NCBI RefSeq assembly: GCF_006345805.1
Contig: NC_043003.1
Span: 112,840,001 to 112,904,000, forward strand
Origin: Octopus sinensis
Lineage: Eukaryota
Reading direction: 5' to 3'
Length of the DNA stretch: 64,000 nt
The notes under the pieces were generated by a model. It had not been told where the DNA came from. It was given only the letters and a program-made list of their open reading frames with translations, and did no database searches. Of the stretch, positions 1,605 to 58,896 are shown one piece after another (positions within the stretch are counted from its first letter, which is position 1; the number at the start of each line of letters is the position of its first letter). Made by a program: the position numbers and the translations under genes.

Positions 1605-1723
1605 TAGAAGCAGATGTGGGGATAAGCAAATCAGAAACATCAATATATAAAGTGTATTAAATACATCAAATGTATTTTATATATTTGATGTTTCTGATTT
1701 ACGTATCCCAACATTTGCTTCTA
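1605..1723. repeat. Imperfect inverted repeat (hairpin, about 45-bp arms)
   Basis: tagaagcagatgtgggataagcaaatcagaaacatcaatatataaa pairs with ttttatatatttgatgtttctgatttacgtatcccaacatttgcttcta. Confidence 0.85.
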
Positions 1724-2193
1724 TACTCACACAGCCTGATCCCTCTTAGTTTGAATTCTATACTCGCACAGCCTGATCCCTCTTAGTTTGAATTCTATAC
1801 TCGCACAGCCTGATCCCTCTTAGTTTGAATTCTATACTCGCACAGCCTGATCCCTCTTAGTTTGAATTCTATACTCGCACAGCCTGATCCCTCTTAGTTT
1901 GAATTCTATACTCGCACAGCCTGATCCCTCTTAGTTTGAATCTATACTCGCACACAGCCTGATCCCTCTTAGTTTGAATTCTATACTCGCACAGCCTGAT
2001 CCCTCTTAGTTTGAATTCTATACTCGCACAGCCTGATCCCTCTTAGTTTGAATTCTATACTCGCACAGCCTGATCCCTCTTAGTTTGAATTCTATACTCA
2101 CACAGCCTGATCCCTCTTAGTTTGAATTCTATACTCGCACAGCCTGACCCCTCTTAGTTTGAATTCTATACTCGCACAGCCTGATCCCTCTTA
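1719..2193. repeat. 37-bp minisatellite, about 13 near-identical copies
   Basis: Unit ctatactcgcacagcctgatccctcttagtttgaatt; unit starts at 1721, 1758 etc.; no spacers. Confidence 0.95.
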
Positions 2194-3633: not shown

Positions 3634-3726
<93 letters not shown>

Positions 3727-3780
3727 CAGACAAGAAAATAGAGAGATAATAAATTTTTATTTATAAATTAAAAAATTGAC

Positions 3781-3960
3781 AAAAATCCCTTACTACTGTT
3801 TCAATTCAAGACCTTCAGAAAATGAATTAATAGAAATGAACTGAATATCTATTTTGCATATCTTAAACTACATCTGACAAGATTCAACTTTCACATAATT
3901 TTTAATTTATCAACTAATTTTCTGAAGGTCTTGAATTGAAACAGCTGTAAGGGATGTTTG
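3781..3960. mobile_element. MITE-like element with about 40-bp TIRs
   Basis: atcccttactactgtttcaattcaagaccttcagaaaat vs attttctgaaggtcttgaattgaaacagctgtaagggat. Confidence 0.75.
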
Positions 3961-4914
3961 TTTAGTTTTTTTAAATTTATAAGTAATAATATATTATCTC
4001 TCTATTTTCTTAACTTATTATAATAAATAATATATATAAACCACGGTTTATATAGTTACCGTGCATTACTAACTGTAATGTTTAACACTCTTTGTATAGG
4101 TAACTAACCAATACTTTCATAGGATTTTGCCATCCCTTAATGAACTTTGTAAACTTTATACCTTTATTTGCATGTAAGTATATATATATATATATGGACT
4201 CCACATGTGGACTCTCTCTCATTACTGTATTAATAATTTTTACTGTATCCCAGTCTTTATACACTAGGCCACTTGGTGTTTTAAATTGATGTTATTAATT
4301 AATATTCAATTTTTTTCACCCTTATTGTGATTATATATATATATATATATATATATTAATCAATTTAGGGTAGTAAAAAATTCGATAGAAATTTATCACT
4401 ACCAGCGGCCCAGTGGAAAAGAAAAATAGTCATGAGACTAAAATGTAAATATATAACAATTTAGGAATGGCCTTAACAGGCCATTCGTCCACTAGACAGA
4501 GCAGCCATAACTCTAACCGCAAAGTAATATAATTCGGAAATAGGTGAAAAATTAAAAACGTTTACCCTAATTCATCTTTTAGACGATGCATCGTTTCTGC
4601 GTGATATGTATAGGAAATACCATGAAAGAATAGATGTAAGGAATTTATGATAAGTGATGTAACCGCAACGTGCGTCAGCCAGACAATTGTGAGTCGCATG
4701 TAGGTGAAATGTTAAAAAAGCATTTTATCCTTAACTACTGATGCAATTAAATTATTCTGTATAAAAGAATCTTGACACAGATCTAGATATATACCAATAA
4801 TATGAAAATATTGACAGTAGGCAAACTACCTACATAAACTGAAGCCACTTGCACATTTAATAATACAAGTTTACGAGACATTAATCAATAGTGCAATACT
4901 AAAGCAACTATGTG

Positions 4915-10249: not shown

Positions 10250-10540
10250 GTGGAAGGGTGTCTTTTTTTCTTCACAAATGTAAATAAACCCAATCTGTTT
10301 CTTAAACGAGGGACATATTCATACGGCACAGAATGTTTTTTTTACCTCAACAGACGTCATTGGTTGAAATTGCAGAAATTGAAGAAAAAAACAACAAATA
10401 TCTTACAAACTATAGAATTTTCTCAATAAAGCCAAGAGAAAAAGATGTTTTATAAACACATTCTACCAGTATACGAAGTTTAAAATTTTTTAGTTACCTA
10501 GAAATTATGTTAAAAACTGCCGTTCAAACCGAAAAGATCC
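10250..10540. mobile_element. Truncated copy of the MITE at 35873-36280
   Basis: Reverse-complement match to about 35873-36140, ending in aaaaactgccgttcaaaccgaaaagatcc. Confidence 0.8.
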
Positions 10541-30430: not shown

Positions 30431-31502
30431 CCTATTCCTGCGTGCCCCATTGTGACTACAATCACCAACACCACCAGCTTCGGCCCTCCCTCAACTAATA
30501 CCTGGGAGTCCGCCAAAGCGTTTGGCCAGAACATACACAAGCGCACTCACAAACACACAGGCCCCAGCACAACGAGCGTTCACCCATAGACATTTTTCCA
30601 TCTCCCCATATAATCCTCCACACATATAGTACCTCTATACATACTGTATGCATACATAAATGCCCCAAGAATTTAGCCAAAACATAAAAGAAAGAAAACA
30701 CACTAAAGAAACAGATGTGTGTGCTCCCCATCCCCGCAAAGGCTATACATATAGTACCACTACACACATTTCATTTCTACAAGAATACCAAACTTAAAGA
30801 TACACACATTTTCCATAAACTCTCTTCCAGAAAACTCTTGCCAACTTGAAAAACTCCCAGAGATGGTGTTTTTGGTACCAAAGGATATAACTATTAACTT
30901 AACCCCTGCTCAGTTCGTGTCACCGATTTTTTTCATAGCAGTCACAAAACGGATGTCACTGTTCATCTTGAACAAGAGACAACAATCGCCATATTTCATT
31001 CCATAGCGGCTACTTCTGAAAAGTGCAGGGTTACATATTCGGCCTGTTACCTACTGTTCAATCCCTAGTGCGAAACCGATTTGTAAGATCATCCGTAATG
31101 AATATATAATACTGTACACTGAACTGACAGATATACGAATGTATTTTATCCTGACTTATGGACTTTTAGACGGCTTACACACATACACATACACACACAC
31201 ACACACATAGACACGCGCGCACGCGCACACACACACACACACACGCACACACTCGCAGTCATATATACACCTACAAAAATTTCAATTGATTCAGCGAGAT
31301 GCTATTTAGTACATGTAAATGTAGAGTATTCTTTAATAATTTATACCTGAAAGGCTGAGAATTTCAATATTCTAGCAATGTTTTCTGTTAAATTACTTGT
31401 TGAATTATTGAAATATTATAAATGATTTTAAAATATTATATGTATGAAATATTTCGTGATTGGATTTGGTTTGCAAGATTCTTTATATGAGTTCGTGTGT
31501 TG

Positions 31503-31801
31503 AAACATATACTGTTGTGTCTGGGGAGAGTCATTCTCTTTTAGTGCCTTATTATTTAATACACTCCACTTATTTCTTATTTTTATTTTCTAAAAATTTC
31601 GTTGCGTGTTGCAACCTTTTCAATAATCTTGACTATTGAAAAGGTTGCAAGACTATTGCAAGACTATTGAAAAGGTTGCAACACGCAAGGAAAATTTTAG
31701 AAAATAAAAATAAGAAATAAGTGGAAATTTTATCGGTGTGTGTGTTAAATAATAAAGCACTAAAAGAGAATGACCCTCCCCAGACACAACAGAATATGTT
31801 T
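31503..31801. mobile_element. Foldback (palindromic) MITE-like element with locally duplicated centre
   Basis: aaacatatactgttgtgtctggggagagtcattctcttttagtgc vs gcactaaaagagaatgaccctccccagacacaacagaatatgttt; centre repeats gactattgaaaaggttgcaa. Confidence 0.8.
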
Positions 31802-33130
31802 GAAAGTTATGAGGAAAGGCTTTTCATTGTGTTTCCGAAAAATATCGCGTAAGGGACACGTGCAAAGCAAAAAAAAAACGGCTCACGTTTTTCATTTCCA
31901 TTTCTGTCTCTAGTGTCAGGAACAAGTCTCCTCAACGTCTTAAATCTTATACAAGGCACATGTGTGCGCGCGCGTGTGTGTGTTTTTATAGCAACGTAAG
32001 TAAAATATACTGGACATTCAGAAATTTCATCAGGAGAGTTGCACAAGTGATCGTCGGCCGAATGAACGCATCGAATAAGAAATACCAATTAGCTGTAATC
32101 GGAGATCAACAGTATCGTGAAATTCCCTCTATTCGGTTTCCTGTCCCTCGAAAATGAAATGTATGTATATTTATGTTTACTGTCTAGGTTTGTGAGGTGT
32201 GTGGTTGTGTGTTAGTTCGTACGTATGTATGTTCAAAGAGAGAGATAAAGAGAGAGAGGAGGAGAGATGGATATAAGGGAAAGAGAGAGTGTGTGAGAGA
32301 GAGAAAGAGAGAGTTGTGTGGGAGAGACAGAGGAGAAATAGAGTTGTGTGTAGAGAGGGTGAGAAAAAGAGAGAGAGAGTGAGGGAGCGAGGGAGTGGGA
32401 AAGAAAGAGGGAAGGTGTGAGTCTTACAAAGAGACTCAAAGATATTTCCAAATAAAGAAGAATTAAATGTATTCACAATAACCAACGCTCTGATTGCTAT
32501 CAGTTGGAATATACAAATATGTCAAAGGTGAAATGGAAAGAGAAGCTTTGCTTAAAACAATGTGAAATTCAATAAGCCCACCAACAAAACTAACAACTAT
32601 CAACAATATCAAGGGCCTAACTCTACCCCACCCTTAATCATGTCAACACTAACAACAATAAGAAAACGAATACTGATACGCGTTTTACTGTGGTTTGATG
32701 TTTTAATGGGCGTTTAGGATTTCAGATAACAACTTCTAGAATTCTTGGCTGTTTGAACCATTTCTTAGGAAGAAATCTATAATGGCTGACTTAAGTAGGG
32801 ACTGGTGAGGTGTACATTGCATTCTTGTCTTAACTATTTCTATTTCCCCCAGTAACTTTGAAGCTCTGTCTTTATCTTTGAGATAAATTGACTTATATTT
32901 GGCCTTGATGTGTCTTGATTTATGAGAGTCTGGAGTAAAATGCTTGACAACGAAGATAACTGCAGTTTTCATCACACTTTTGATCTTCTTCCTCAAATTT
33001 CTGCAATGTGAGAATATTTCCCTTTGTAATCCTTGAAACCCGTCAAAGTTAACATATATCGCGCTTTCGGGTCAATCAATACTTACTGAATAAAATTTAG
33101 CAGGGGAAACTATATGGAAACCCAGAATAT

Positions 33131-33164
<34 letters not shown>

Positions 33165-33304
33165 AGTTTTGAATGGTACAATGCACTATAATTCAAATAA
33201 CGGGTATATACCTGTTGTTTGAATTATAGAGCATTGTTGTACCATTCAAAGCTTTTTATTCTTCACAAACAATACACAGTGCTTCAGGCGAACTACAATA
33301 CTCT

Positions 33305-34099
<795 letters not shown>

Positions 34100-34100
<1 letters not shown>

Positions 34101-34430
34101 TCTCCAACGCCGCTGGGAGCGCTACATCATTTGTGTTATGTGGAAAATATTCCATCAATATGAATTCGGCATCAGTTTTAAAATTCATCCATGTCTTGAG
34201 CCCTGTTCTATCCGCCCGCTACAAAAATCGAGCTCGGTATACATAGCAAAATTATGTCACAATTACTTTACCAGCTCTCTTTAATACCTTACCAAATATG
34301 TCAAAACGAAAACGGATCCCATAAAATTCAAATGTTCACTGGACAAATTTCTTCAAAAAATCCCAGACCAATCACCTACACCCGGTTATGTCTCCAACAA
34401 TAATAACTCTTTGCTAGAGTGAGCCATGGT
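34100..34430 (+). mobile_element. CR1/L2-clade LINE 3' end
   Basis: LQRRWERYIICVMWKIF..HNYFTS..KFKCSLDKFL.KIPDQ..PGYVS motifs. Confidence 0.7.
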
Positions 34431-34534
34431 ACCCCATATGTGACTAAAAGACTTCACCAGGTGGTGCTATTAAGTTAGACATGGCCTGGGCCCATACTGG
34501 CAGAAACCTATCAAAGTTATTAGAGTTATCAAAG

Positions 34535-34568
<34 letters not shown>

Positions 34569-35380
34569 GCGAGAAAGAAGCAACAAGAATGGATAGGTTT
34601 TTAGTACGATCGTTTCATACAAGGACAGGTTTTATTAAAAGTTGCAAAGATTACAGCATATAAACGAGTCCCGTACTCATCAGCTAAAATACATGTGAGT
34701 TCTCTAGACATCCTAGTGTTTGAGGCTATACTCATGAAGTAATGTAGATAATTAATTAACATAAACAGATTTCTAAAGTTCATTAAAGTTCTTTAAAGAT
34801 GATGTACAGTCTTATCACAGAATTTTAAAAAGTTTTGATAGCATCACAGAGAAGGTGACCTAATCCATATGAATTTCCATAGATATGATGAGGGATTATA
34901 TACTCACAGAAGACAAATTTATCCATTGTTAATTACAACGAGGTGGGTCTCAATTCCTGCTTATTAGCATTACAGTAATGCTAATAAGCAGGAATTGAGA
35001 CCCACCTCGTTGTAATTAACAATGGATAAATTTGTCTTCTGTGAGTATATAATCCCTCATCATATCTATGGAAATTCATATGGATTAGGTCACCTTCTCT
35101 GTGATGCTATCAAAACTTTTTTAAAATTCTGTGATAAGACTGTACATCATCTTTAAAGAACTTTAATGAACTTTAGAAATCTGTTTATGTTAATTAATTA
35201 TCTACATTACTTCATGAGTATAGCCTCAAACACTAGGATGTCTAGAGAACTCACATGTATTTTAGCTGATGAGTACGGGACTCGTTTATATGCTGTAATC
35301 TTTGCAACTTTTAATAAAACCTGTCCTTGTATGAAACGATCGTACTAAAAACCTATCCATTCTTGTTGCTTCTTTCTCGC
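34569..35380. repeat. Near-perfect 812-bp palindrome (405/406-bp arms, 1-nt spacer at 34974)
   Basis: Centre gcattac-a-gtaatgc; the only difference seen by eye is A5 vs T6; the same 60-aa ORF is reported on both strands. Confidence 0.95.
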
Positions 35381-35872
35381 TTATAATCACCCCACATTAC
35401 TGTATTGTTAAATCAGTATAGTTTTTTTTGGTGCATCTAAGTTAGGTACCATATTCAAGTAAATTCATTTAAATTAACTTGAATCTTTATTGCTCTTTGA
35501 ATGTATATATATATATATATATAATTGCTGTGTGAGTGTATAGTGAACTCAAAAGTTACTCTTTCGAAAACAACTGCTGTTTCAACATGTATACAACAAT
35601 TCTTTAACGAAAACAATAGAACAAGACCTGGAAATGCAATTATAACTTTTACTGAAGGAAGTCAAAGCAATATCAGGTTTTTCAATTAAAACCTTGCTCA
35701 ATTCAAATACAATTTGTTTTTATTCCTCACCTTAAAAGGCCACTAAGTACTAAACAAACAAGTCTATATCACTACTGTCCATATTTGTATATAAAATACA
35801 ACAATTAACCCTCATTTTTGACGGCACAGGGTCAGCTGGTATGTATATAATGCGTATTGAGTAACACACACC

Positions 35873-36280
35873 GGAGCTTTTCGGTTTGAACGGTAGTTTT
35901 TTAAAATAATTCCCACGTAACTAAACACTTTTAAACTTCGTATACTGGTAGAATGTGTTTATAAAACATCTTTTTCTCTTGGTTTTATTGAGAAAATTCT
36001 ATAGATTGTAAGATATTTATTGTTTTTCAATCAGTAACATCTATTGAGTTAAAAAGCATTCTGTGCCGTATGAATATGTCCCTCGTTTAAGAAACAGATT
36101 GGGTTTATTTACATTTGTGAAGAAAAAAAAATACCCTTCCTTCACCCCTAACCCTAATCCTAACTAACCCTAACCCTAAAAGAGATTGAAATGCAATAGA
36201 TCGATTCTAAGGTCATAATTATGGGTGACAATTTCATATGACATCGCTAGAAAAAACTGCCTTTCAAACCGAAAAGATCC
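35873..36280. mobile_element. MITE with about 30-bp TIRs and internal (CCCTAA)-like repeats
   Basis: ggagcttttcggtttgaacggtagtttttt / aaaaaactgcctttcaaaccgaaaagatcc; cccctaaccctaatcctaactaaccctaaccctaa at about 36146-36180. Confidence 0.85.
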
Positions 36281-37429
36281 GAGATATTTTATTAATAGTT
36301 TCTTTAAAAAACATCAGTTAAATTATCCCTTGTCAGCGGGAAAAATTGGTAAAATCACCAACTGGAATTGAACCTCTTGTCTATTATATACCGAACAGCC
36401 AGAATAAACATTCTTCTGATCTGAAATCTTAACTGTGAAGATTATAAGTTTTAGCTGAACAAGTAAGAAAGTAAGCATTATTCAGTTCGTTTGAATCAAT
36501 GGCGATTTCGATAATGAATATTTAAGAAGCAGCTAATATGCAAATTGAGTTATAAATAATTGCTTATGTATTGGCGATGATAATTTCAATGGTCGATGGT
36601 TGTCAGATTAGTTTGGATAATGGCTGTCGCTGTTGTTATTTATAAAGCAGAAATGAGATGCGATATCCGTGGGCAATTTATTCCAACGTAGTCGTCGACA
36701 AGTTGTGTTTTACACAATATATAAAGAACTACTATTTATTGCTTCACTTACTTTGACGTAAATTCTTAAATATCTATTTTCATTTTTTTTATCGATGCTT
36801 TAATCGATCTAAATTTTTTTTTTAAATGGTTGCTTTTCTAGTCAAAATTTCTAATTTTCTTAACCGAGAGTATTAGTTTCATAGCGACATTTAGATGAAA
36901 GAAGATATTTAGAAGACACGTGATTAGTTGAAGGGATGGTAGGAAAAGGATGGAGAAGGGAGGGGAGAGGTGACAGAAATGGGAGGCGAAAAAGGAGGAG
37001 CAACTGGGGGGGGGGGAGAGTGGCAAGGAGAGGAAGAAGTTGTGGTAATCTTTTAAACTAAGTTTTTTTCCGCCGTTACTTAGCCCAACAGTAACGCTTT
37101 CACGTAATTAGCTGAAGGAAAAGAGAAAGGCGAAAGAAAAAGGAGAGTGAAAAGGGAGAGAGAGCAGCAAGATAGAAAGAAGAAGGGTGTTGTGTATTGG
37201 GTCTATAAAATTGTGCATAATGTATATAAAGTGCATTAAGTAATCATCGTAATCCAATTTCATTCACTTCTCAGGGATTAGCAGATGAGCGACTATCTTT
37301 TGATACAGACGCAACACAGGCAACGCTTTCAGGTTTTTTGGATAAAGTTTTCAGAAATAACACAATAAGTTTACCATTAATTCGTTAAATATTGACGGGT
37401 GCCGCTAGTAATGATAATAATGACAATAA

Positions 37430-41217: not shown

Positions 41218-41542
41218 GGTCCCGGGTTGAGTCGGGGTTAACCACAGTAAATAAGGTACTCAATACATAGCAGAGTAAATTAATTTATTTTATAGAAGGA
41301 GGTAGAAGCTCCTTCTATAAAATAAATATATATATATATATATATATAATAAATAATTGAGATTCAGTTGAATTAGGTACTTAATTTGAAGCACCAAGTC
41401 AATGCAGTGTTATCCGTACAGCTCAAAGTAAAGTGAATAAAGTCAAAATAAGCAACGATATCCTGTTGCTTATTTTGATTATATATATATGTGTGTGTGT
41501 GTGTATATATATACATACGCCTATACACGCACACACACAGAC

Positions 41543-51047: not shown

Positions 51048-51875
51048 CATTGGGCTGCTTCGTCCAGGGTTGTAACAAACATAAAAATACACTACAGATA
51101 ATATTAATTTGATACCTAATAGTGTCTGAATGTGCAGATAAGTTCGTCCTAAGACGGTGCTTCTATTTAAGTACCTAATTCAACTTGGATCTAAGGTATA
51201 TTTTATATAAAAGAAGATATATATATATATATATATATATATGAAGAGAGCGAGAGAGATTGATAGCCAAATGGATAGATAGATAAATATGTGCGACGAA
51301 GCAGAGATAAATGAGGGGCGTGACTCTACGAATGTTAGAAGAGAGGGTGCTTAATGGGTGTTACAGCAATGTGTCACGCCAGTTTTATACTTGATCAGAC
51401 AAGTATGTGATGATGTGCTGGTGCCTGAAAGAATTACAGTGGAGAATGGTAAACCTGATGTATACAGATAAATGCTCGCTCTCTCCTGGGGCAAGTTTGT
51501 AACTGATAGTCCCGTTCCTTTGCTAGTGAAATGGCTTTTTCTTCTTGTCGTTTTACTGATAACGTTAGAGCGATAAATTATATTCCTTAAATCCTCAAAA
51601 AATATTTTAGCCCGAAGGTCGCGGCAATGCTGGGGCACCACCGCATATTGTTAATGCTTTTTTATAAATTTCTGTTGGTCACTGTGTTGAGCTGTCTCAA
51701 ATATTGTGTAAGATATTGGGTCTCATTTCTCTTTCGATCACACACACACACACATTTAGATCGATTGATATACACACATACATATACATACACAAACACA
51801 CTCATACATCCATGCGTGCACACATACATACAGACACATGCACACAAACACTAGTGGAGAGGGAGGAATATATTT

Positions 51876-52173
51876 ATCGTGAAGTATTTTTGCCACTTAA
51901 ATGTGGCTAACCCTTAAGGGTGGATGCTACTGTAGCTTGTAGCCCCAGGGGGACACCTCCTCCAGCTGTCTATTGACAAACTATCAGTATTTGCAAAGGG
52001 AGTCCGTGTGTATCATAGGTTGAAGAGGGGAAGGTTGGCTTCCCTTTGCAAATACTGATAGGGCACAGAAAGTGTGTCAATAGCCACCTGGAGGAGGTGT
52101 CTTCCTGGGGCTACAAGCTACAGTAGCATCCATCCTTAGGGGTTATCCACATCTAAATGCCAAATATACTTCA

Positions 52174-52178
<5 letters not shown>
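51876..52178. mobile_element. GC-rich foldback element (about 100-bp outer arms plus a perfect 21-bp inner inverted repeat)
   Basis: tatcgtgaagta..ggatgctactgtagcttgtagccccagg vs cctggggctacaagctacagtagcatcc..tacttcacgata; inner ctatcagtatttgcaaaggga (51981) / tccctttgcaaatactgatag (52041). Confidence 0.85.
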
Positions 52179-52217
<39 letters not shown>

Positions 52218-54613: not shown

Positions 54614-57444
54614 TAGTTTTATTTTTATTTTTATAGCGTGCTTTCACTTCACTACCGAGCGCAGCTCTGTGTGCCTTGGGTATGTGCTGTGATTTGTTGT
54701 GATGCTCTGATGGTTATTGTATGGAAAGTGTTCTGCGTAGGATGTGTGCAGTGCCTAGTAGTGCAATTTTCTGTATGTTATATGTGTTTGTAAGTCCTGG
54801 TGTTTTTGTTATGTATTTGTCTGAATATTTTTTTATCATGCCTAATGCACCTACTATGATAGGAATTGTTTCTGTTTTCAGATTCCACATTCTAGTTTCC
54901 TCTATTTCCAGGTCTTTGTATTTTGAGAGTTTCTCCATTTCTTTTAGAGACACGTTGTCATCTGCCGGTACTGATACATCAATTAGAAAGCATTTTTTTT
55001 TTTCATGGTCTCTGACAACTATATCTGGTCTGTTGGCCTAATTTCTCTATCTGTGTGTATCGGCATATCCCAGAGTATGGTTGCTTTCTCGTTTTCTGTG
55101 ACCTTTTCTGGTGTGTGCCTATACCATCTTTTTTCTGTTGTTATTCCATAATGTTGGCATAGCTTCCAATGTATGTAAGTTCCAACTCTGTCATGTCTGT
55201 GAATATATTCCTTCTTAGCCAGGACTGGGCAGCTAGAGATAATATGATTCATTGTTTCTTGTCCATCTCCACATATTCTGCAGTTACTTGTAATATTTCT
55301 TTTCATTACATGTCTTTGGTAATTTCTGGTGGGGAGGCTTTGGTCTTGTGCTGCAATTAAAAATCCCTCTGTTTCTGCTTTGAGTCCTGAGCTTCTCAAC
55401 CATTGCTGGGATTTTTCTTTGTCTATTTCTTTTGCGTTTAGTTTAGTCCAGTATTTACCATGAAGGGGCTTTTCTTGCCATCGTTTTATCATGGTTCGTT
55501 GCTGTTCTATTTTTAGTTTGGATTTCATTTTTTTTATAGCTTTTGTTGTTTCTTCATCTTCTTCTTCTTCTTCATGTTTATTAGGTGGTATGATTTCTTG
55601 TTTGTATTTGTCAGCTTCCTTAAATACGGAGAACAGTTTTTTGTTTTGCTCGTGTTTTGCCGCTATCTGGATCAGTTTTCCTTCCTTCTGAAGTAGATAT
55701 TTTTGCAGTCCTATGGTGGTTATTTTATAGTAGTTTTCCAGCTGTATAAGGCCTCTACCACCTTCTATACGTTGTATATATAGTTTTTCTATGTCAGATT
55801 TTGGGTGATGCATCCTAGATCCTGTCATTATTTTTCTTGTTTTCCTGTCTATTTTGGACAGTTCATTTCGTGTCCAGTTAAGGATATTGTAGCTGTAACT
55901 TATAACTGGGACAGCTAAAGTGTTGATACCTATTATCTTGTTTTTAGCATTGAGCTCTGTGTTTAGTATTGATCTAACTCGTCTATAATCTTTTTTATTT
56001 TCTCTTTCATTTGTGTGTGTTGTGTCTTATCTAGTTCATGGATTCCTAAGTATTTGTAAGTTTGGCTTTGGTCTAATTCTTTTATTTCATTTGCTTCATC
56101 TAGTGTGATGTTGTTACTCTTAACTAGTTTTCCTCTTTTCATGGTTACTTTGGCGCATTTTTCTAATCCAAATTTCATATCTATTTCTTTGGTAAATCCA
56201 TGAACTGTCTTTAATAGTGTTTCCAGCTGCTTGTCATTTGCAGCGTATAGTTTTAGGTCATCCATATATAAGGTGGCTGATCGTTTTGCCGTAACATTTA
56301 TATCCGCATCCAGTTCTATTTAGCATATCAGATAGAGGTGACAGTGCCAAGCAGAAAAGGAGTGGAGAGAGCGTATCTCCCTGGAATATTCCTCTTCTAA
56401 TGGGGATGTCTTTGGTTTTCATGAGTCCCTCTTTTGTTTGGAGGTGTAGGACTGTTTGCCATTTATTCATAGAGTGCTCTATGAATTTTATGATTGTTGG
56501 TGCTACTTTGTTAATGGCTAGTGTTTCGAGGATCCATGTGTGGGGGATGCTATCAAACGCCTTTTTGTAGTCAATCCAGGCCATACTGAGGCCTTTCTTC
56601 TTTCTGTGGCTGTCTTCAGTTATGGCTTTATTAATCATTAGTTGATCTTTACAGCCATATGAGCCTTTGCGGCATCCTTTCTGCTCTTCTGGGAACAGTT
56701 TGTTTTCGTCCAGGTGCTTGTTCAGCCTTTGTGATATCACTGCAGTAAATGCCTTGAACATAGTAGGGAGGCAGGTTATTGGTCTGTAGTTTTCTGGTTT
56801 TTCTGTTTCATTTGATTTGGGAATTAAGATGGTTTTCCCCTTCGTGAGCCATTCAGGCATTGTCTCTGGCTCTGCTAGTATGCTGTTAAAGTTTTCAGCC
56901 AGCTTTTTGTGCATTCCTGTTAGATATTTCAAGCAGAAGTTGGGGATCTTGTCATGCCCAGGTGCCTTCCAGTTGCTTAGTCTTTGCAGTGCCTGGGTGA
57001 CCTCTTCAGTTGTTATGGGGGTCCAAATTTGTTCAGATGCCGAGTTTGTTATTTTGATACTCCTTTTTTGGTGGTTCGTTCGCCGACCATATTTCTCCCC
57101 AGAATTCTTCCAATTCTTCTGCCGTTGGTGCTGCAGTGACTTCTATTTTATTTTTGCCCAGTTCTTGGTAGAACTTTTTGGGGTTGGAGTTGAACTTTTT
57201 GTTTCTTCAAAGAAGCGTTGGCGTTTCTTGTACCGGCGGATCCTTTGTGCTTTGGCAAGGATATCTTGCTTCAGCTTTTCTTTTATTTCAGGCAAATCTT
57301 TTTCTGTGATGTTATATTTGCGGAGTATTTTTGTTCTCTTTTTGTTGCTCAGTAGCGTTGATTCTTTGCTGATTTCATTAAGAATCGACAGGTCTTTTCT
57401 ATTTTTTAAATTTTACTTTGGATGTTATTTATCCACAGGGTTTG

Positions 57445-57561: not shown

Positions 57562-57639
57562 GTTGTTATTATTATTATTATATATAGGTTTGTATGTGTG
57601 CATGTGTATAACAAAACAGAAATCCGGAAATTTCAATTT

Positions 57640-57743
57640 CTAATTGGCATTACAAAGATTTACATGTGAGGTATGTAAGGAATTTTCTATTAGAAATTCT
57701 TCACATGCCTATCTCACGTGTCAAACTTTGTAATTCCTATTAG
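57640..57743. repeat. Imperfect ~100-bp hairpin (degenerate MITE-like)
   Basis: ctaattggcattacaaag vs ctttgtaattcctattag, with inner arms also pairing. Confidence 0.6.
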
Positions 57744-58896
57744 TATGTGAAACACGTGTAACGGTGAATAAATAATACGAAAATCTTCCCAATTTCCCTG
57801 TTTTGTTATACAATAATTCTGCAAATAGTATTCTCTATTTTAATATGTATTTTGACTAATACACAGAGGCTACTGAGACTACACATTGAGACTACATATA
57901 TAGTTATGTGTGTGTGTGTGAGTATGAGTGTATATGTGTTTGTGAGTATGAGTGTGTATGTGTGTGTCTGTAAGCGTGTGACTCATCTCGACTTACTTAA
58001 AGAATCTTGGGGTAGGTACAGTCCATCTTATCAACTGTAACTCGAAACCAAATATTCACTTAATCGTTTATAAATGGAGATGTATGTATGTATGTATGTA
58101 TGTATGTATGTATGTATGTATGTATGTATGTATGTATGTCTGTCTGTCTGTCTGTCTGTATGTATGTATGTATGTATGTAGGCCTGTATGTATGTGTGTG
58201 TGTGTGTGTGCATCTGTTTATATGACAATATGTGTGTGTCTATACAATTTATGTTTGCATGAAGGACATTGGAATCTCAAACGTGATTAGTAGATGAAAC
58301 TTCATTTAATGGCAGAAATAATTCTGTTGATGAACATTACACTGCAAGTATTGTGTTTCTTGTTGCCATTTCGCTCCAAGTCCAAATCTTATTGAAGAGT
58401 TATCCTATAAAATTTATCTCACAATACATTTGGCGTGCGTTTACTTACTATGAAGTACAAAACAGAAGCATTAAACGCCATCAAATCCCGGTTTGTTTAG
58501 AGATGTTTGCCTCAAAATCACCTCAGGAAGAGAATGTCTTTAAGTAATGTTTACATCTTTCCAATAGTTTATGAGACTGTCACCAGCGCTGTTATACCTG
58601 TATAATGCTTAGCATTTCTGAGATCTGCTATATCAATAGGTTAATCTCATTATCCCATTGTCACGCCTGAGGCAACCTATTTTGATAAAGCTTAAAGATC
58701 TGACACTTGCGGTTTGACGGATGCAAACATGATAGACAGTAACATGAGAATGGTAAAGCTAAATTTCTCTATTATTAAAATTATCCAAGTAAACTACAAA
58801 CTGACATACACAACTCGCTGGTGGGTGAGTTGTAACATAAGTTTTAACGTATGAATAATTTAGAAATTAAAATATTCAATTCTTCTTTTTAATGTT

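What the first reader, a model, noticed from the sequence alone, without database searches (positions are those of the whole stretch)
34569..35380. 812-bp near-perfect palindrome with a 1-nt spacer and a template-switch signature
Seen: arms of 405 and 406 bp match except for one homopolymer base. The left arm ends in CATTAC (34973), and just outside the right arm CATTAC-T-GTATTG (35395-35407) is itself a quasi-palindrome resembling the centre. Deleting 34974-35400 would rejoin ..gcattac|tgtattg.. Inference: a very recent fold-back/template-switch inverted duplication. Such perfect palindromes are normally unstable (cruciforms) and would yield ~400-bp dsRNA, a substrate for siRNA production or A-to-I editing, which is extensive in coleoids. 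A sequencing or amplification fold-back artefact is a serious alternative.
Basis: partly seen in the sequence, partly recalled or inferred. Interest (0 to 1): 0.7.

Follow-up and report, generated by a model that had tools for sequence, protein, structure and literature searches.

The report
Very young 812-bp DNA palindrome
A 405-base stretch of non-coding DNA has been copied backwards right next to itself, with junctions that carry the marks of a DNA polymerase jumping between strands; this is a known kind of mutation, unusually large and fresh here, and whether it exists in the animal or only in the assembly needs the raw reads.

Summary
The palindrome is real in the sequence. The left arm is 34569-34973, the centre base is A at 34974, and the right arm is 34975-35380. 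The arms are identical except for one homopolymer base (A5 against T6). The arm occurs nowhere else in the window and matches nothing in the databases I could search.

The template-switch reading is supported. Removing 34974-35400 rebuilds a site, TTAGCATTAC-T-GTATTGTTAA, that is a rare quasi-palindrome (8/10; P~0.001). The inserted block is bounded by a CATTAC direct repeat (P~0.004). The centre base A is the complement of the rebuilt T. That fits a nascent strand switching to the opposite template, not a self fold-back.

New finding: the left arm starts 0-1 nt after the (TA)16 tail of an old, degenerate LINE fragment, so the backward copy stopped at a hairpin-forming TA tract. Fourteen bases (35381-35394) have no template in the window.

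A whole-read fold-back artefact does not fit, because the arms stop after 405 nt and the flanks are not mirrored. An in-vitro polymerase switch or an assembly error cannot be excluded without reads.

Eight older, decayed palindromes lie in the same window, and 4 of the 9 abut TA tracts.

Verdict: new member of a known kind, moderate interest.

The parts
34569..34973 (+). Left arm (405 nt). Inferred to be the original copy. Ends in CATTAC.
   Evidence: It directly follows the LINE tail. It has no other copy in the window.
34974..34974 (+). Single centre base A, the complement of the T (35401) that follows CATTAC in the rebuilt empty site.
   Evidence: This base separates an inter-strand switch (predicts A) from a self fold-back (predicts T).
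34975..35380 (+). Right arm (406 nt). Inferred to be the inverted copy.
   Evidence: It is identical to the reverse complement of the left arm except for one homopolymer base.
34827..34831 (+). A5 homopolymer in the left arm. Its partner is T6 at 35117-35122. This is the only difference between the arms.
   Evidence: alignment and the sequence.
35117..35122 (+). T6 homopolymer in the right arm, partner of the A5 above.
35381..35394 (+). 14-nt filler TTATAATCACCCCA between the copy and the return point. No template was found for it.
   Evidence: one match in the window, itself, with up to 3 mismatches. (no k-mer of 10 or more bases shared with nearby sequence).
34968..34973 (+). CATTAC, first copy of the 6-nt direct repeat that bounds the inserted block (donor end of switch 1, return point of switch 2).
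35395..35400 (+). CATTAC, second copy of the direct repeat.
   Evidence: P=0.004 for a random 30-nt piece of the window.
35401..35411 (+). T + GTATTGTTAA, the right half of the quasi-palindrome in the rebuilt empty site. Inferred acceptor for the first switch: GTA pairs with the primer end TAC.
   Evidence: 8/10 complementarity to TTAGCATTAC; P=0.0012 of window positions.
34096..34568 (+). Degenerate, 5'-truncated non-LTR retrotransposon (LINE) 3' end with a (TA)16 tail at 34536-34567. It bounds the left arm.
   Evidence: translation ends ...KFKCSLDKFLQKIPDQSPTPGYVSNNNNSLLE*; relatives P0001/L001 and P0002/L004 end in (TATCWAAG)3 TATATATA[C/T], followed by unrelated DNA.
35504..35523 (.). Second (TA)10 tract, 123 nt to the right of the palindrome. 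Context only; no role shown.

Best explanation
This is a very recent in-vivo inverted duplication made by two polymerase template switches within one replication fork or repair tract (the 'four-point' template-switch mutation).

The rebuilt ancestral locus is: old LINE fragment, then its (TA)16 tail, then a 405-nt unique sequence ending TTAGCATTAC, then T-GTATTGTTAA...

Step 1 (inferred from the junction). A nascent plus strand ending in ...CATTAC left its template. It paired its 3' TAC (5 of 6 and 8 of 10 bases further back) with GTATTG.. on the other, plus-sense template, for example the lagging-strand template.

Step 2 (shown by the sequence). It copied that template backwards. T gave the centre A, CATTAC gave GTAATG, and the copy ran on through all 405 nt, giving the right arm.

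Step 3 (inferred). Copying ended where the template enters the hairpin-prone (TA)16 tract.

Step 4. Fourteen bases of unknown origin were added. The strand then returned to the original template at CATTAC and carried on into TGTATTG...

Net effect: a 427-bp insertion (34974-35400) that turns a weak quasi-palindrome into an 812-bp near-perfect palindrome. The one homopolymer difference is either a slip during the error-prone copy, a later mutation, or a consensus error.

No function is implied. The expected consequences are a cruciform or hairpin-prone fragile site and, if the locus is transcribed, a ~400-bp dsRNA.
For: The arms are identical over 405 nt with a 1-nt centre.

The inserted block is bounded by the direct repeat CATTAC (P=0.004).

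The rebuilt empty site TTAGCATTAC-T-GTATTGTTAA is an 8/10 quasi-palindrome, found at only 0.12% of window positions. The 10-mer CATTACTGTA is shared by the centre (minus strand) and the right flank (P=0.003).

The centre base A equals the complement of the rebuilt T (direct reading).

The left arm begins 0-1 nt after the canonical end of a LINE whose relatives end in the same TA tail. The LINE relic carries an in-frame stop and indels while the arms are identical, so the LINE came first and the copy stopped at its tail.

The flanks are not mirrored beyond the arms. This excludes a simple whole-read fold-back as described in PMC12870357.

Eight older palindromes (74-89% arm identity) lie in the same 64 kb, and 4 of the 9 abut a (TA)>=6 tract at one outer end, against 0.14 expected (P~5e-5). 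Decayed palindromes cannot be sequencing artefacts.

Literature. Leading-to-lagging template switches at 2-14-bp interrupted inverted repeats are documented in yeast (PMC10766183). The four-point model is described in great apes (PMC7954356). AT repeats stall replication (PMC11797062).
Against: No reads, no second individual and no outgroup could be examined, so the empty-site allele is a reconstruction, not an observation (all came back empty).

The 14-nt filler has no template.

The base after the right arm is T, not the G expected if copying had run into the LINE tail.

The 406-nt copied tract is far longer than in catalogued short-range events (median 12, maximum 128 nt in great apes).

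The other palindromes in the window are all 89% or less, so there is a gap rather than a continuum up to 99.8%. This one is an outlier in both size and identity.

Perfect long palindromes without a spacer are the most break-prone class (PMC7999016).

An in-vitro polymerase would leave the same junction signature.
Confidence: 0.55

Rival explanations
1. Artefact: the 427-bp inverted block is absent from the animal's genome. It arose by polymerase template switching in vitro (whole-genome or PCR amplification before long-read sequencing), or from one aberrant read that survived consensus, polishing or gap filling.
For: In-vitro strand-displacing polymerases make inverted chimeras with microhomology. 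Assemblies from amplified DNA contain many inverted duplications (PMC6218980). Fold-back reads make up ~0.6% of ONT genomic reads (PMC12870357). Single-read inverted junctions are treated as PCR artefacts in PMC10766183. This palindrome is the only near-perfect one in the window and an outlier in size and identity. The one difference between the arms is a homopolymer length, the typical residual long-read error.
Against: The described fold-back read artefact is symmetric about the read midpoint, with arms running to the read ends. Here the arms stop at 405 nt and tens of kb of unmirrored sequence lie on both sides. Two coordinated switches 427 bp apart are needed. A single aberrant read would normally be voted out by consensus (my knowledge of assemblers, not tested). 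The copy stops at a TA tract, as do older palindromes in the window that cannot be artefacts. I have no evidence that the library was amplified.
Confidence: 0.25
2. A fold-back or MITE-like transposon: an ~814-bp element that is one long terminal inverted repeat, inserted at a TA at the edge of the LINE's TA tail.
For: The window holds eight other hairpin-like palindromes of 45-321 bp that could be MITEs, several of them next to TA tracts. TA is the target of Tc1/mariner-type elements (established knowledge). A TA|...|TA duplication can be drawn at 34566-67 and 35382-83. Being single copy in 64 kb does not exclude a family of hundreds of copies in a genome of gigabases.
Against: A TA 'duplication' inside a TA tract is uninformative, and the terminal bases (C...T) are not complementary. 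No second copy or fragment of the arm is in the window. No terminal motif is shared with the other palindromes, which are unrelated to each other. Insertion does not explain why the flank 15-30 nt away repeats the centre of the element and forms a quasi-palindrome with the arm end (P~0.004 and ~0.001). MITE arms are not normally 100% identical over 405 nt (my knowledge).
Confidence: 0.08
3. An older and originally longer palindrome, with arms kept identical by gene conversion between them, later truncated on the left by the LINE insertion.
For: The left arm ends exactly at the LINE junction. TTATAA|GCGAG would be a plausible TA-rich target for a LINE with a TA tail. Arm-to-arm conversion is known for large palindromes (PMC6790999, listed).
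Against: The displaced outer part of the left arm (GTAATGTGGGGTGATTATAA) is nowhere in the 64 kb, even allowing 3 mismatches. The DNA 5' of the LINE fragment is a SINE. The LINE relic is degenerate while the arms show no substitution. The similarity between centre and flank would have to be coincidence.
Confidence: 0.04
4. A selected hairpin-RNA (endo-siRNA or miRNA-like) gene, with the palindrome maintained because its transcript is processed. This concerns function and does not exclude a template-switch origin.
For: A perfect 404-bp RNA stem is predicted. Template switching is a documented source of new hairpin RNA genes (PMC10710096). dsRNA abundance tracks A-to-I editing across animals (PMC5625713).
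Against: There is no evidence of transcription. Rfam gives only generic miRNA-hairpin hits, all below their gathering scores and equal on both strands. The arm has no copy elsewhere in the window and no protein-level relative, so no target is visible. Zero divergence means there has been no time for selection to show.
Confidence: 0.03

Closest known systems
Short-range template-switch mutations (four-point model; quasi-palindrome-to-palindrome conversion): PMC7954356, PMC10710096
   Same: A reverse-complement copy of the adjacent sequence is inserted in place. The switch occurs at a pre-existing imperfect inverted repeat. The strand returns to the original template at microhomology, and a perfect hairpin results.
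   Different: The copied tract is 406 nt, against a median of 12 and a maximum of 128 nt in the great-ape set. There is a 14-nt untemplated filler. No ancestral sequence is available to confirm the reconstruction.
[quoted passage not shown]
   Same: [quoted passage not shown]
   Different: ODIRA junctions use repeats spaced 40-80 bp apart and give kb-to-Mb inverted triplications through extrachromosomal intermediates. Here the spacing is 1 nt, the strand returns after 420 nt, and the product is a small interstitial palindrome.
Human palindromic AT-rich repeats (PATRR11 ~450 bp, PATRR22 ~600 bp, PATRR17 ~190 bp): PMC1851657
   Same: Germline, non-coding, near-perfect palindromes of several hundred bp without a spacer. 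They are prone to cruciform formation and hard to sequence.
   Different: PATRRs are defined as AT-rich. This arm is 67% A+T against 63% for the window, so it is barely richer than background. No translocation or polymorphism data exist for it, and its origin signature is readable because it is so young.
Fold-back artefact reads in long-read sequencing, and WGA palindromic chimeras: PMC12870357, PMC6218980
   Same: Near-perfect juxtaposition of forward and reverse strands with little or no sequence between them.
   Different: Artefact reads are symmetric about the read midpoint, with arms running to the read ends. This structure has 405-nt arms embedded between long, unmirrored flanks and a second junction that returns to the original strand.
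Fold-back / hairpin MITE transposons
   Same: The whole element is an inverted repeat, lies next to TA-rich DNA, and has a size in the hundreds of bp.
   Different: There is no demonstrable target-site duplication, no second copy in the window, arms are 100% identical, and the flank repeats the centre of the element, which insertion does not predict.

Membership tests
Template-switch mutation (four-point model) | The descendant carries a reverse-complement copy (segment 2->3) of sequence lying within the same local region | tested here: met
   The right arm 34975-35380 is the reverse complement of 34569-34973, 405/405 plus one homopolymer indel.
Template-switch mutation (four-point model) | The switch points show complementarity or microhomology that allows re-priming (pre-existing quasi-palindrome at 1/2; homology at 3/4) | tested here: met
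   The rebuilt site is an 8/10 quasi-palindrome with the inner 3 bases perfect (P 0.0012 and 0.0004). There is a CATTAC direct repeat at the return point (P 0.004). The centre base A is the complement of the rebuilt T.
Template-switch mutation (four-point model) | An ancestral or outgroup sequence lacks the inverted copy and matches the L->1 / 4->R fragments | not testable with these tools
   No eukaryotic genome or read set was available. An arm 29-mer and the empty-site 27-mer were both absent from metagenome contigs. Arm ORFs were absent from the protein collection.
Long-read fold-back artefact (Breakinator definition) | The two halves map to the same place on opposite strands, symmetric about the read midpoint, so the arms extend to the ends of the molecule | tested here: not met
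   Complementarity ends after 405 nt (plus 4 trivial TA bases). The left flank (LINE tail) and the right flank (TTATAATCACC...) are unrelated. Definition taken.
Long-read fold-back artefact (Breakinator definition) | Not supported by the other reads covering the locus | not testable with these tools
   No reads were available.
WGA/MDA inverted chimera | The library was made from amplified DNA, and chimeras are frequent along the assembly | tested here: inconclusive
   Library type is unknown. Only one near-perfect inverted duplication occurs in 64 kb, which does not suggest pervasive chimeras but is too small a sample.
PATRR-like palindromic AT-rich repeat | Near-perfect palindrome of hundreds of bp without a spacer | tested here: met
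   812 bp with a 1-nt centre.
PATRR-like palindromic AT-rich repeat | Markedly AT-rich relative to the surroundings | tested here: not met
   Arm GC is 32.8%, the central 100 bp 37%, the window 36.6%.
Fold-back / MITE transposon | Multiple dispersed copies | tested here: inconclusive
   There are 0 other copies in 64 kb. A genome-wide count was not possible.
Fold-back / MITE transposon | Target-site duplication flanking complementary termini | tested here: inconclusive
   Only a TA|TA can be drawn, inside a TA tract, and the terminal bases C/T are not complementary.
Rfam miRNA families (mir-4477, mir-95, mir-583) | Score at or above the family's gathering threshold | tested here: not met
   Scores are 54, 46.9 and 46 bits against thresholds of 74, 67.5 and 80. 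Scores on the two strands are equal, as expected for any perfect hairpin.
hpRNA / endo-siRNA locus | Transcription, small RNAs from the stem, and sequence identity to a target gene | not testable with these tools
   No expression data. No second copy of the arm in the window and no protein-level relative.

The most novel reading that the evidence does not exclude
The 812-bp palindrome may be the newest product of a recurrent process in this genome. In that process a nascent strand switches to the opposite template at a tiny quasi-palindrome and copies backwards until it meets a hairpin-forming (TA)n tract. This would spawn spacer-less palindromes whose one outer end abuts a TA microsatellite. 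It would explain why 4 of 9 palindromes in 64 kb sit against TA tracts. It would also provide a steady supply of long perfect hairpins, which are raw material for dsRNA, ADAR hyper-editing substrates or new hairpin-RNA genes, and of new fragile sites.
Probability: 0.15. Interest if true: 0.6.

Novelty: new member of a known kind. Interest (0 to 1): 0.35.

Why it matters
If it exists in the animal, this is an unusually clean snapshot of a large template-switch event. There are no later mutations, so both junctions, the primer-template pairing, the centre base and the stopping point at a TA tract can be read directly. The copied tract is about three times longer than the longest short-range events catalogued in great apes.

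Spacer-less palindromes of this size are the most break-prone DNA known. A germline example would therefore be a natural fragile site and a candidate polymorphism. If transcribed, it would give a ~400-bp perfect dsRNA.

If it is an artefact, it is a useful warning. An embedded inverted duplication with convincing microhomology at both junctions could pass assembly quality control, and fold-back filters that rely on read symmetry would miss it.

Either way the finding is ordinary in kind. Its value lies in the detail.

Tried and rejected
1. Independent assemblies of the locus. Exact look-up of 10 ORFs from the arms and flanks found none in the protein collection. A homologue search with the longest arm reading frame found no candidate. 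Metagenome scans for an arm 29-mer and for the rebuilt empty-site 27-mer gave 0 hits each. No independent evidence was obtained.

2. A template for the 14-nt filler. It was searched in the window with up to 3 mismatches and by k-mers. Only chance-level 7-9-mers turned up. A 10/15 resemblance to the LINE 3'UTR, noted by eye, is not significant.

3. Self fold-back (snap-back) of the nascent strand. Rejected because it predicts T at the centre. The rebuilt site also does not fold into the quasi-palindrome hairpin as its minimum-energy structure.

4. Fold-back at a break inside the TA tract. Rejected on geometry, because it would put the TA tract at the centre of the palindrome, not at an outer end.

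5. The mirror model, in which the left arm is the copy and deleting 34569-34973 rejoins TATAC|AGTAATG. It has only a 3-nt TAC repeat and a terminally mismatched 4-nt match, and it leaves the centre/flank similarity unexplained, so it was ranked lower.

6. The LINE inserting after the palindrome formed. Rejected: the displaced arm piece is absent and the LINE is degenerate.

7. Rfam. Only sub-threshold generic hairpin hits.

8. Species identification. The best relative of a reverse-transcriptase ORF in the window is a Logan contig of run SRR7158634 (93%), followed by an unnamed NCBI assembly, GCA_024449705.1 (72%). Neither accession appears in the paper library. The taxon is therefore not established by tools. 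'Octopus-like SINE' is only my recollection.

9. The same centre/flank signature in the older palindromes. There is an 8-mer (TTGCAAGA) for 31500-31804 and a 7-mer for 33164-33254. Both are too weak to claim.

Full report
1. THE OBSERVATION

The sequence, the repeat finder and a gapped alignment of the left half against the reverse complement of the right half agree. The left arm is 34569-34973 (405 nt), there is one centre base (A, 34974), and the right arm is 34975-35380 (406 nt). All 405 aligned positions are identical. The single difference is a homopolymer length, A5 at 34827-34831 against T6 at 35117-35122.

Four further bases pair beyond the arms after one mismatch (TATAC / TTATA). Next to a TA microsatellite this carries no weight.

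As RNA the 812 nt fold into a 404-bp stem with a 3-nt loop at -709.8 kcal/mol, against -165 +/- 6 for shuffles. This is the only repeat of >=100 bp at >=97% identity in the window apart from a 37-bp minisatellite and a (TA)70 tract.

2. WHAT THE ARM IS

The arm is single copy in the 64 kb at word size 7. Its GC content is 32.8% against 36.6% for the window. It has no convincing reading frame. Its longest frames are absent from a 15-billion-protein collection, both by exact look-up and by homology. Rfam gives only generic miRNA-hairpin hits, below threshold and equal on both strands. It looks like ordinary unique non-coding DNA in a repeat-rich region.

3. THE SURROUNDINGS

Two tRNA-derived SINE copies lie upstream at about 33446-34095 and are 79-86% alike.

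From 34096 to 34568 there is a 5'-truncated, degenerate 3' end of a non-LTR retrotransposon. Its translation ends ...KFKCSLDKFLQKIPDQSPTPGYVSNNNNSLLE* and contains an in-frame stop. Two relatives from metagenome contigs are 59-63% identical at the protein level (P0001/L001 and P0002/L004). They align through the 3'UTR and end in (TATCWAAG)3 TATATATA[C/T], after which their flanks are unrelated. In the window that tail is (TA)16 followed by C at 34568.

The left arm therefore starts 0-1 nt after the retrotransposon's own end. The relic has decayed, with a stop and many indels, while the arms show no substitution. So the retrotransposon was there first, and the outer limit of the duplication coincides with its TA tail.

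4. THE JUNCTIONS

On the minus strand the centre reads CATTAC-T-GTAATG. The right flank at 35395-35407 reads CATTAC-T-GTATTG. They share an exact 10-mer, and 15 of 17 bases match.

I tested three things empirically against the window itself:
- A match of >=10 between the 25-nt centre and 40-nt flanks has P=0.003.
- CATTAC occurs in a random 30-nt piece with P=0.004.
- The site rebuilt by joining 34973 to 35401, TTAGCATTAC-T-GTATTGTTAA, is a quasi-palindrome with 8 of 10 complementary bases. Only 0.12% of window positions reach that, and 0.04% if the three inner pairs must also be perfect.

The last two tests use different flank bases, so they count separately. Together they make chance an unlikely explanation.

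5. MECHANISM

The product ...CATTAC|A|GTAATGC... requires a primer ending in CATTAC and a plus-sense template reading CATTAC-T. That template is exactly the rebuilt ancestral plus strand. The primer's 3' TAC pairs with GTA (35402-35404 in present coordinates). The next template base T gives the centre A, and CATTAC gives GTAATG. The rest of the arm then gives the right arm.

This is an inter-strand switch, for example nascent leading strand to lagging-strand template. A self fold-back of the nascent strand would have kept T at the centre, so that variant is disfavoured.

The backward copy covers the whole 405 nt and ends where the template becomes (TA)16. That tract can form a hairpin in single-stranded DNA, and AT repeats of this kind stall replication (PMC11797062). 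The stop at the TA tract is an inference.

Fourteen bases follow (TTATAATCACCCCA, 35381-35394), and I found no template for them. Synthesis then resumes on the original template at CATTAC, which duplicates those 6 nt.

What is shown: the inverted copy, the direct repeat, the quasi-palindrome, the identity of the centre base, and the coincidence with the LINE tail. What is inferred: the replication-fork setting, the role of the TA tract, and the order of the switches.

6. REAL OR ARTEFACT

The fold-back artefact described for long reads is a read whose two halves map to the same place on opposite strands, symmetric about the read midpoint. It makes up ~0.6% of ONT genomic reads and is almost absent from HiFi (PMC12870357). 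That anatomy is not met here. The arms stop at 405 nt and both flanks continue for tens of kb without mirroring.

Amplified libraries do give assemblies with inverted duplications (PMC6218980), and an in-vitro polymerase would leave the same microhomology. Nothing in the window says whether the library was amplified. I could obtain no reads and no second assembly. The question therefore stays open. I put about 0.55 on an in-vivo event and 0.25 on an artefact.

7. CONTEXT THAT LEANS TOWARDS BIOLOGY

A self-comparison of the window finds eight other palindromes made of complex sequence:
- 1605-1723
- 3712-4032
- 31500-31804
- 33164-33254
- 41283-41327
- 41437-41484
- 51868-52185
- 57631-57752

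Their arm identities are 74-89%. Each is single copy in the window, and they are unrelated to one another. Four of the nine, including this one, abut a (TA)>=6 tract at one outer end. Random placement expects 0.14, giving P~5e-5.

Decayed palindromes cannot be read artefacts, so something in this genome makes or places palindromes next to TA tracts.

Two cautions apply. First, they may be hairpin MITEs that target TA, which would also explain the association. Second, there is a gap between 89% and 99.8% identity, so the 812-bp palindrome is an outlier rather than the tip of a smooth age series.

8. OTHER RIVALS

A fold-back or MITE insertion (0.08) explains the TA neighbourhood. It does not explain the repeat of the element's centre in the flank, nor the perfect arms, and no informative target-site duplication exists.

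An older, longer palindrome cut by the LINE (0.04) fails because the displaced arm piece is absent from the window and because the LINE is the older feature.

A selected hairpin-RNA gene (0.03) cannot be tested here and is not needed to explain the structure.

9. COMPARISON WITH KNOWN SYSTEMS

In mechanism it matches short-range template-switch mutations (PMC7954356; PMC10710096) and the first step of ODIRA (PMC10766183). It differs by its 406-nt copied tract (maximum 128 nt in the great-ape catalogue), its 1-nt spacing and its filler.

In structure it resembles the human PATRRs (~190-600 bp; PMC1851657) but is barely more AT-rich than its surroundings. A catalogue cited in PMC7999016 counts 718 spacer-less near-perfect palindromes longer than 200 bp in the human genome. 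Such objects are rare but known.

10. VERDICT

The template-switch interpretation is supported and refined: an inter-strand switch, a stop at a LINE TA tail, and an unexplained 14-nt filler. Existence in vivo is unproven. The dsRNA, siRNA and editing consequences, and the coleoid origin of the window, are untested. This is a new member of a known kind. Interest 0.35.

Noticed in passing
window 1605-1723, 3712-4032, 31500-31804, 33164-33254, 41283-41327, 41437-41484, 51868-52185, 57631-57752: Eight further palindromes made of complex sequence (45-321 bp, arm identity 74-89%, little or no spacer). Each is single copy in the window and they are unrelated to each other. Counting the 812-bp one, 4 of 9 abut a (TA)>=6 tract at one outer end (expected 0.14, P~5e-5). 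They could be hairpin MITEs or old template-switch products.
   Followed up: partly
window 31500-31804: This 305-bp palindrome has an internal direct repeat at its centre (TTGCAAGACTATTGCAAGACTATTG). An 8-mer from the centre (TTGCAAGA) recurs within the 40 nt outside its left end, a faint echo of the centre/flank signature seen at the 812-bp palindrome.
   Followed up: partly
window 34096-34568; L001 174-655; L004 ~400-575: Degenerate 5'-truncated LINE 3' end. Its only detectable relatives (59-63% protein identity) are on short metagenome contigs (JGI 3300037538, ENA ERZ23499376). The family ends in (TATCWAAG)3 followed by a short TA run, which has expanded to (TA)16 in the window. No target-site duplication is visible for the window copy.
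   Followed up: partly
L001 642-890 (minus strand): In the JGI contig, an 82-residue gene is called on the opposite strand just downstream of the LINE tail. From a by-eye translation of the L001 sequence printed, it looks to me like a GIY-YIG-type nuclease fragment of a Penelope-like element. I did not check this with any domain search.
   Followed up: no
window 33446-34095: Two tandem, head-to-tail copies of a tRNA-derived SINE (~300 bp each, 79-86% alike). The second is cut off where the LINE fragment begins.
   Followed up: partly
window 33307-33445: An almost pure (TA)70 microsatellite. At least 24 separate (TA)>=8 tracts occur in the 64 kb, about one per 2.7 kb.
   Followed up: partly
window 36148-36179: A short interstitial telomere-like array, (CCCTAA)-type units: cccctaaccctaatcctaactaaccctaaccctaa.
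   Followed up: no
window 1719-2193: A 37-bp-period minisatellite of about 13 units at 95-99% identity. It starts right after the 1605-1723 palindrome.
   Followed up: no
window 55019-56932 (minus strand): Reverse-transcriptase ORFs of a non-LTR element (224 and 269 aa). The best relative is 93% identical on a Logan contig of run SRR7158634, and the next is 72% in NCBI assembly GCA_024449705.1. Named hits are only ~50% identical (starfish, hydrozoan, shrimp). The species of the window could not be established from these.
   Followed up: partly
window 35873-36140 and 10252-10540: A ~290-bp dispersed repeat, 85% identical in inverted orientation, carrying a 31-nt inverted repeat at 35872-35902 / 36251-36281. 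Unclassified.
   Followed up: no
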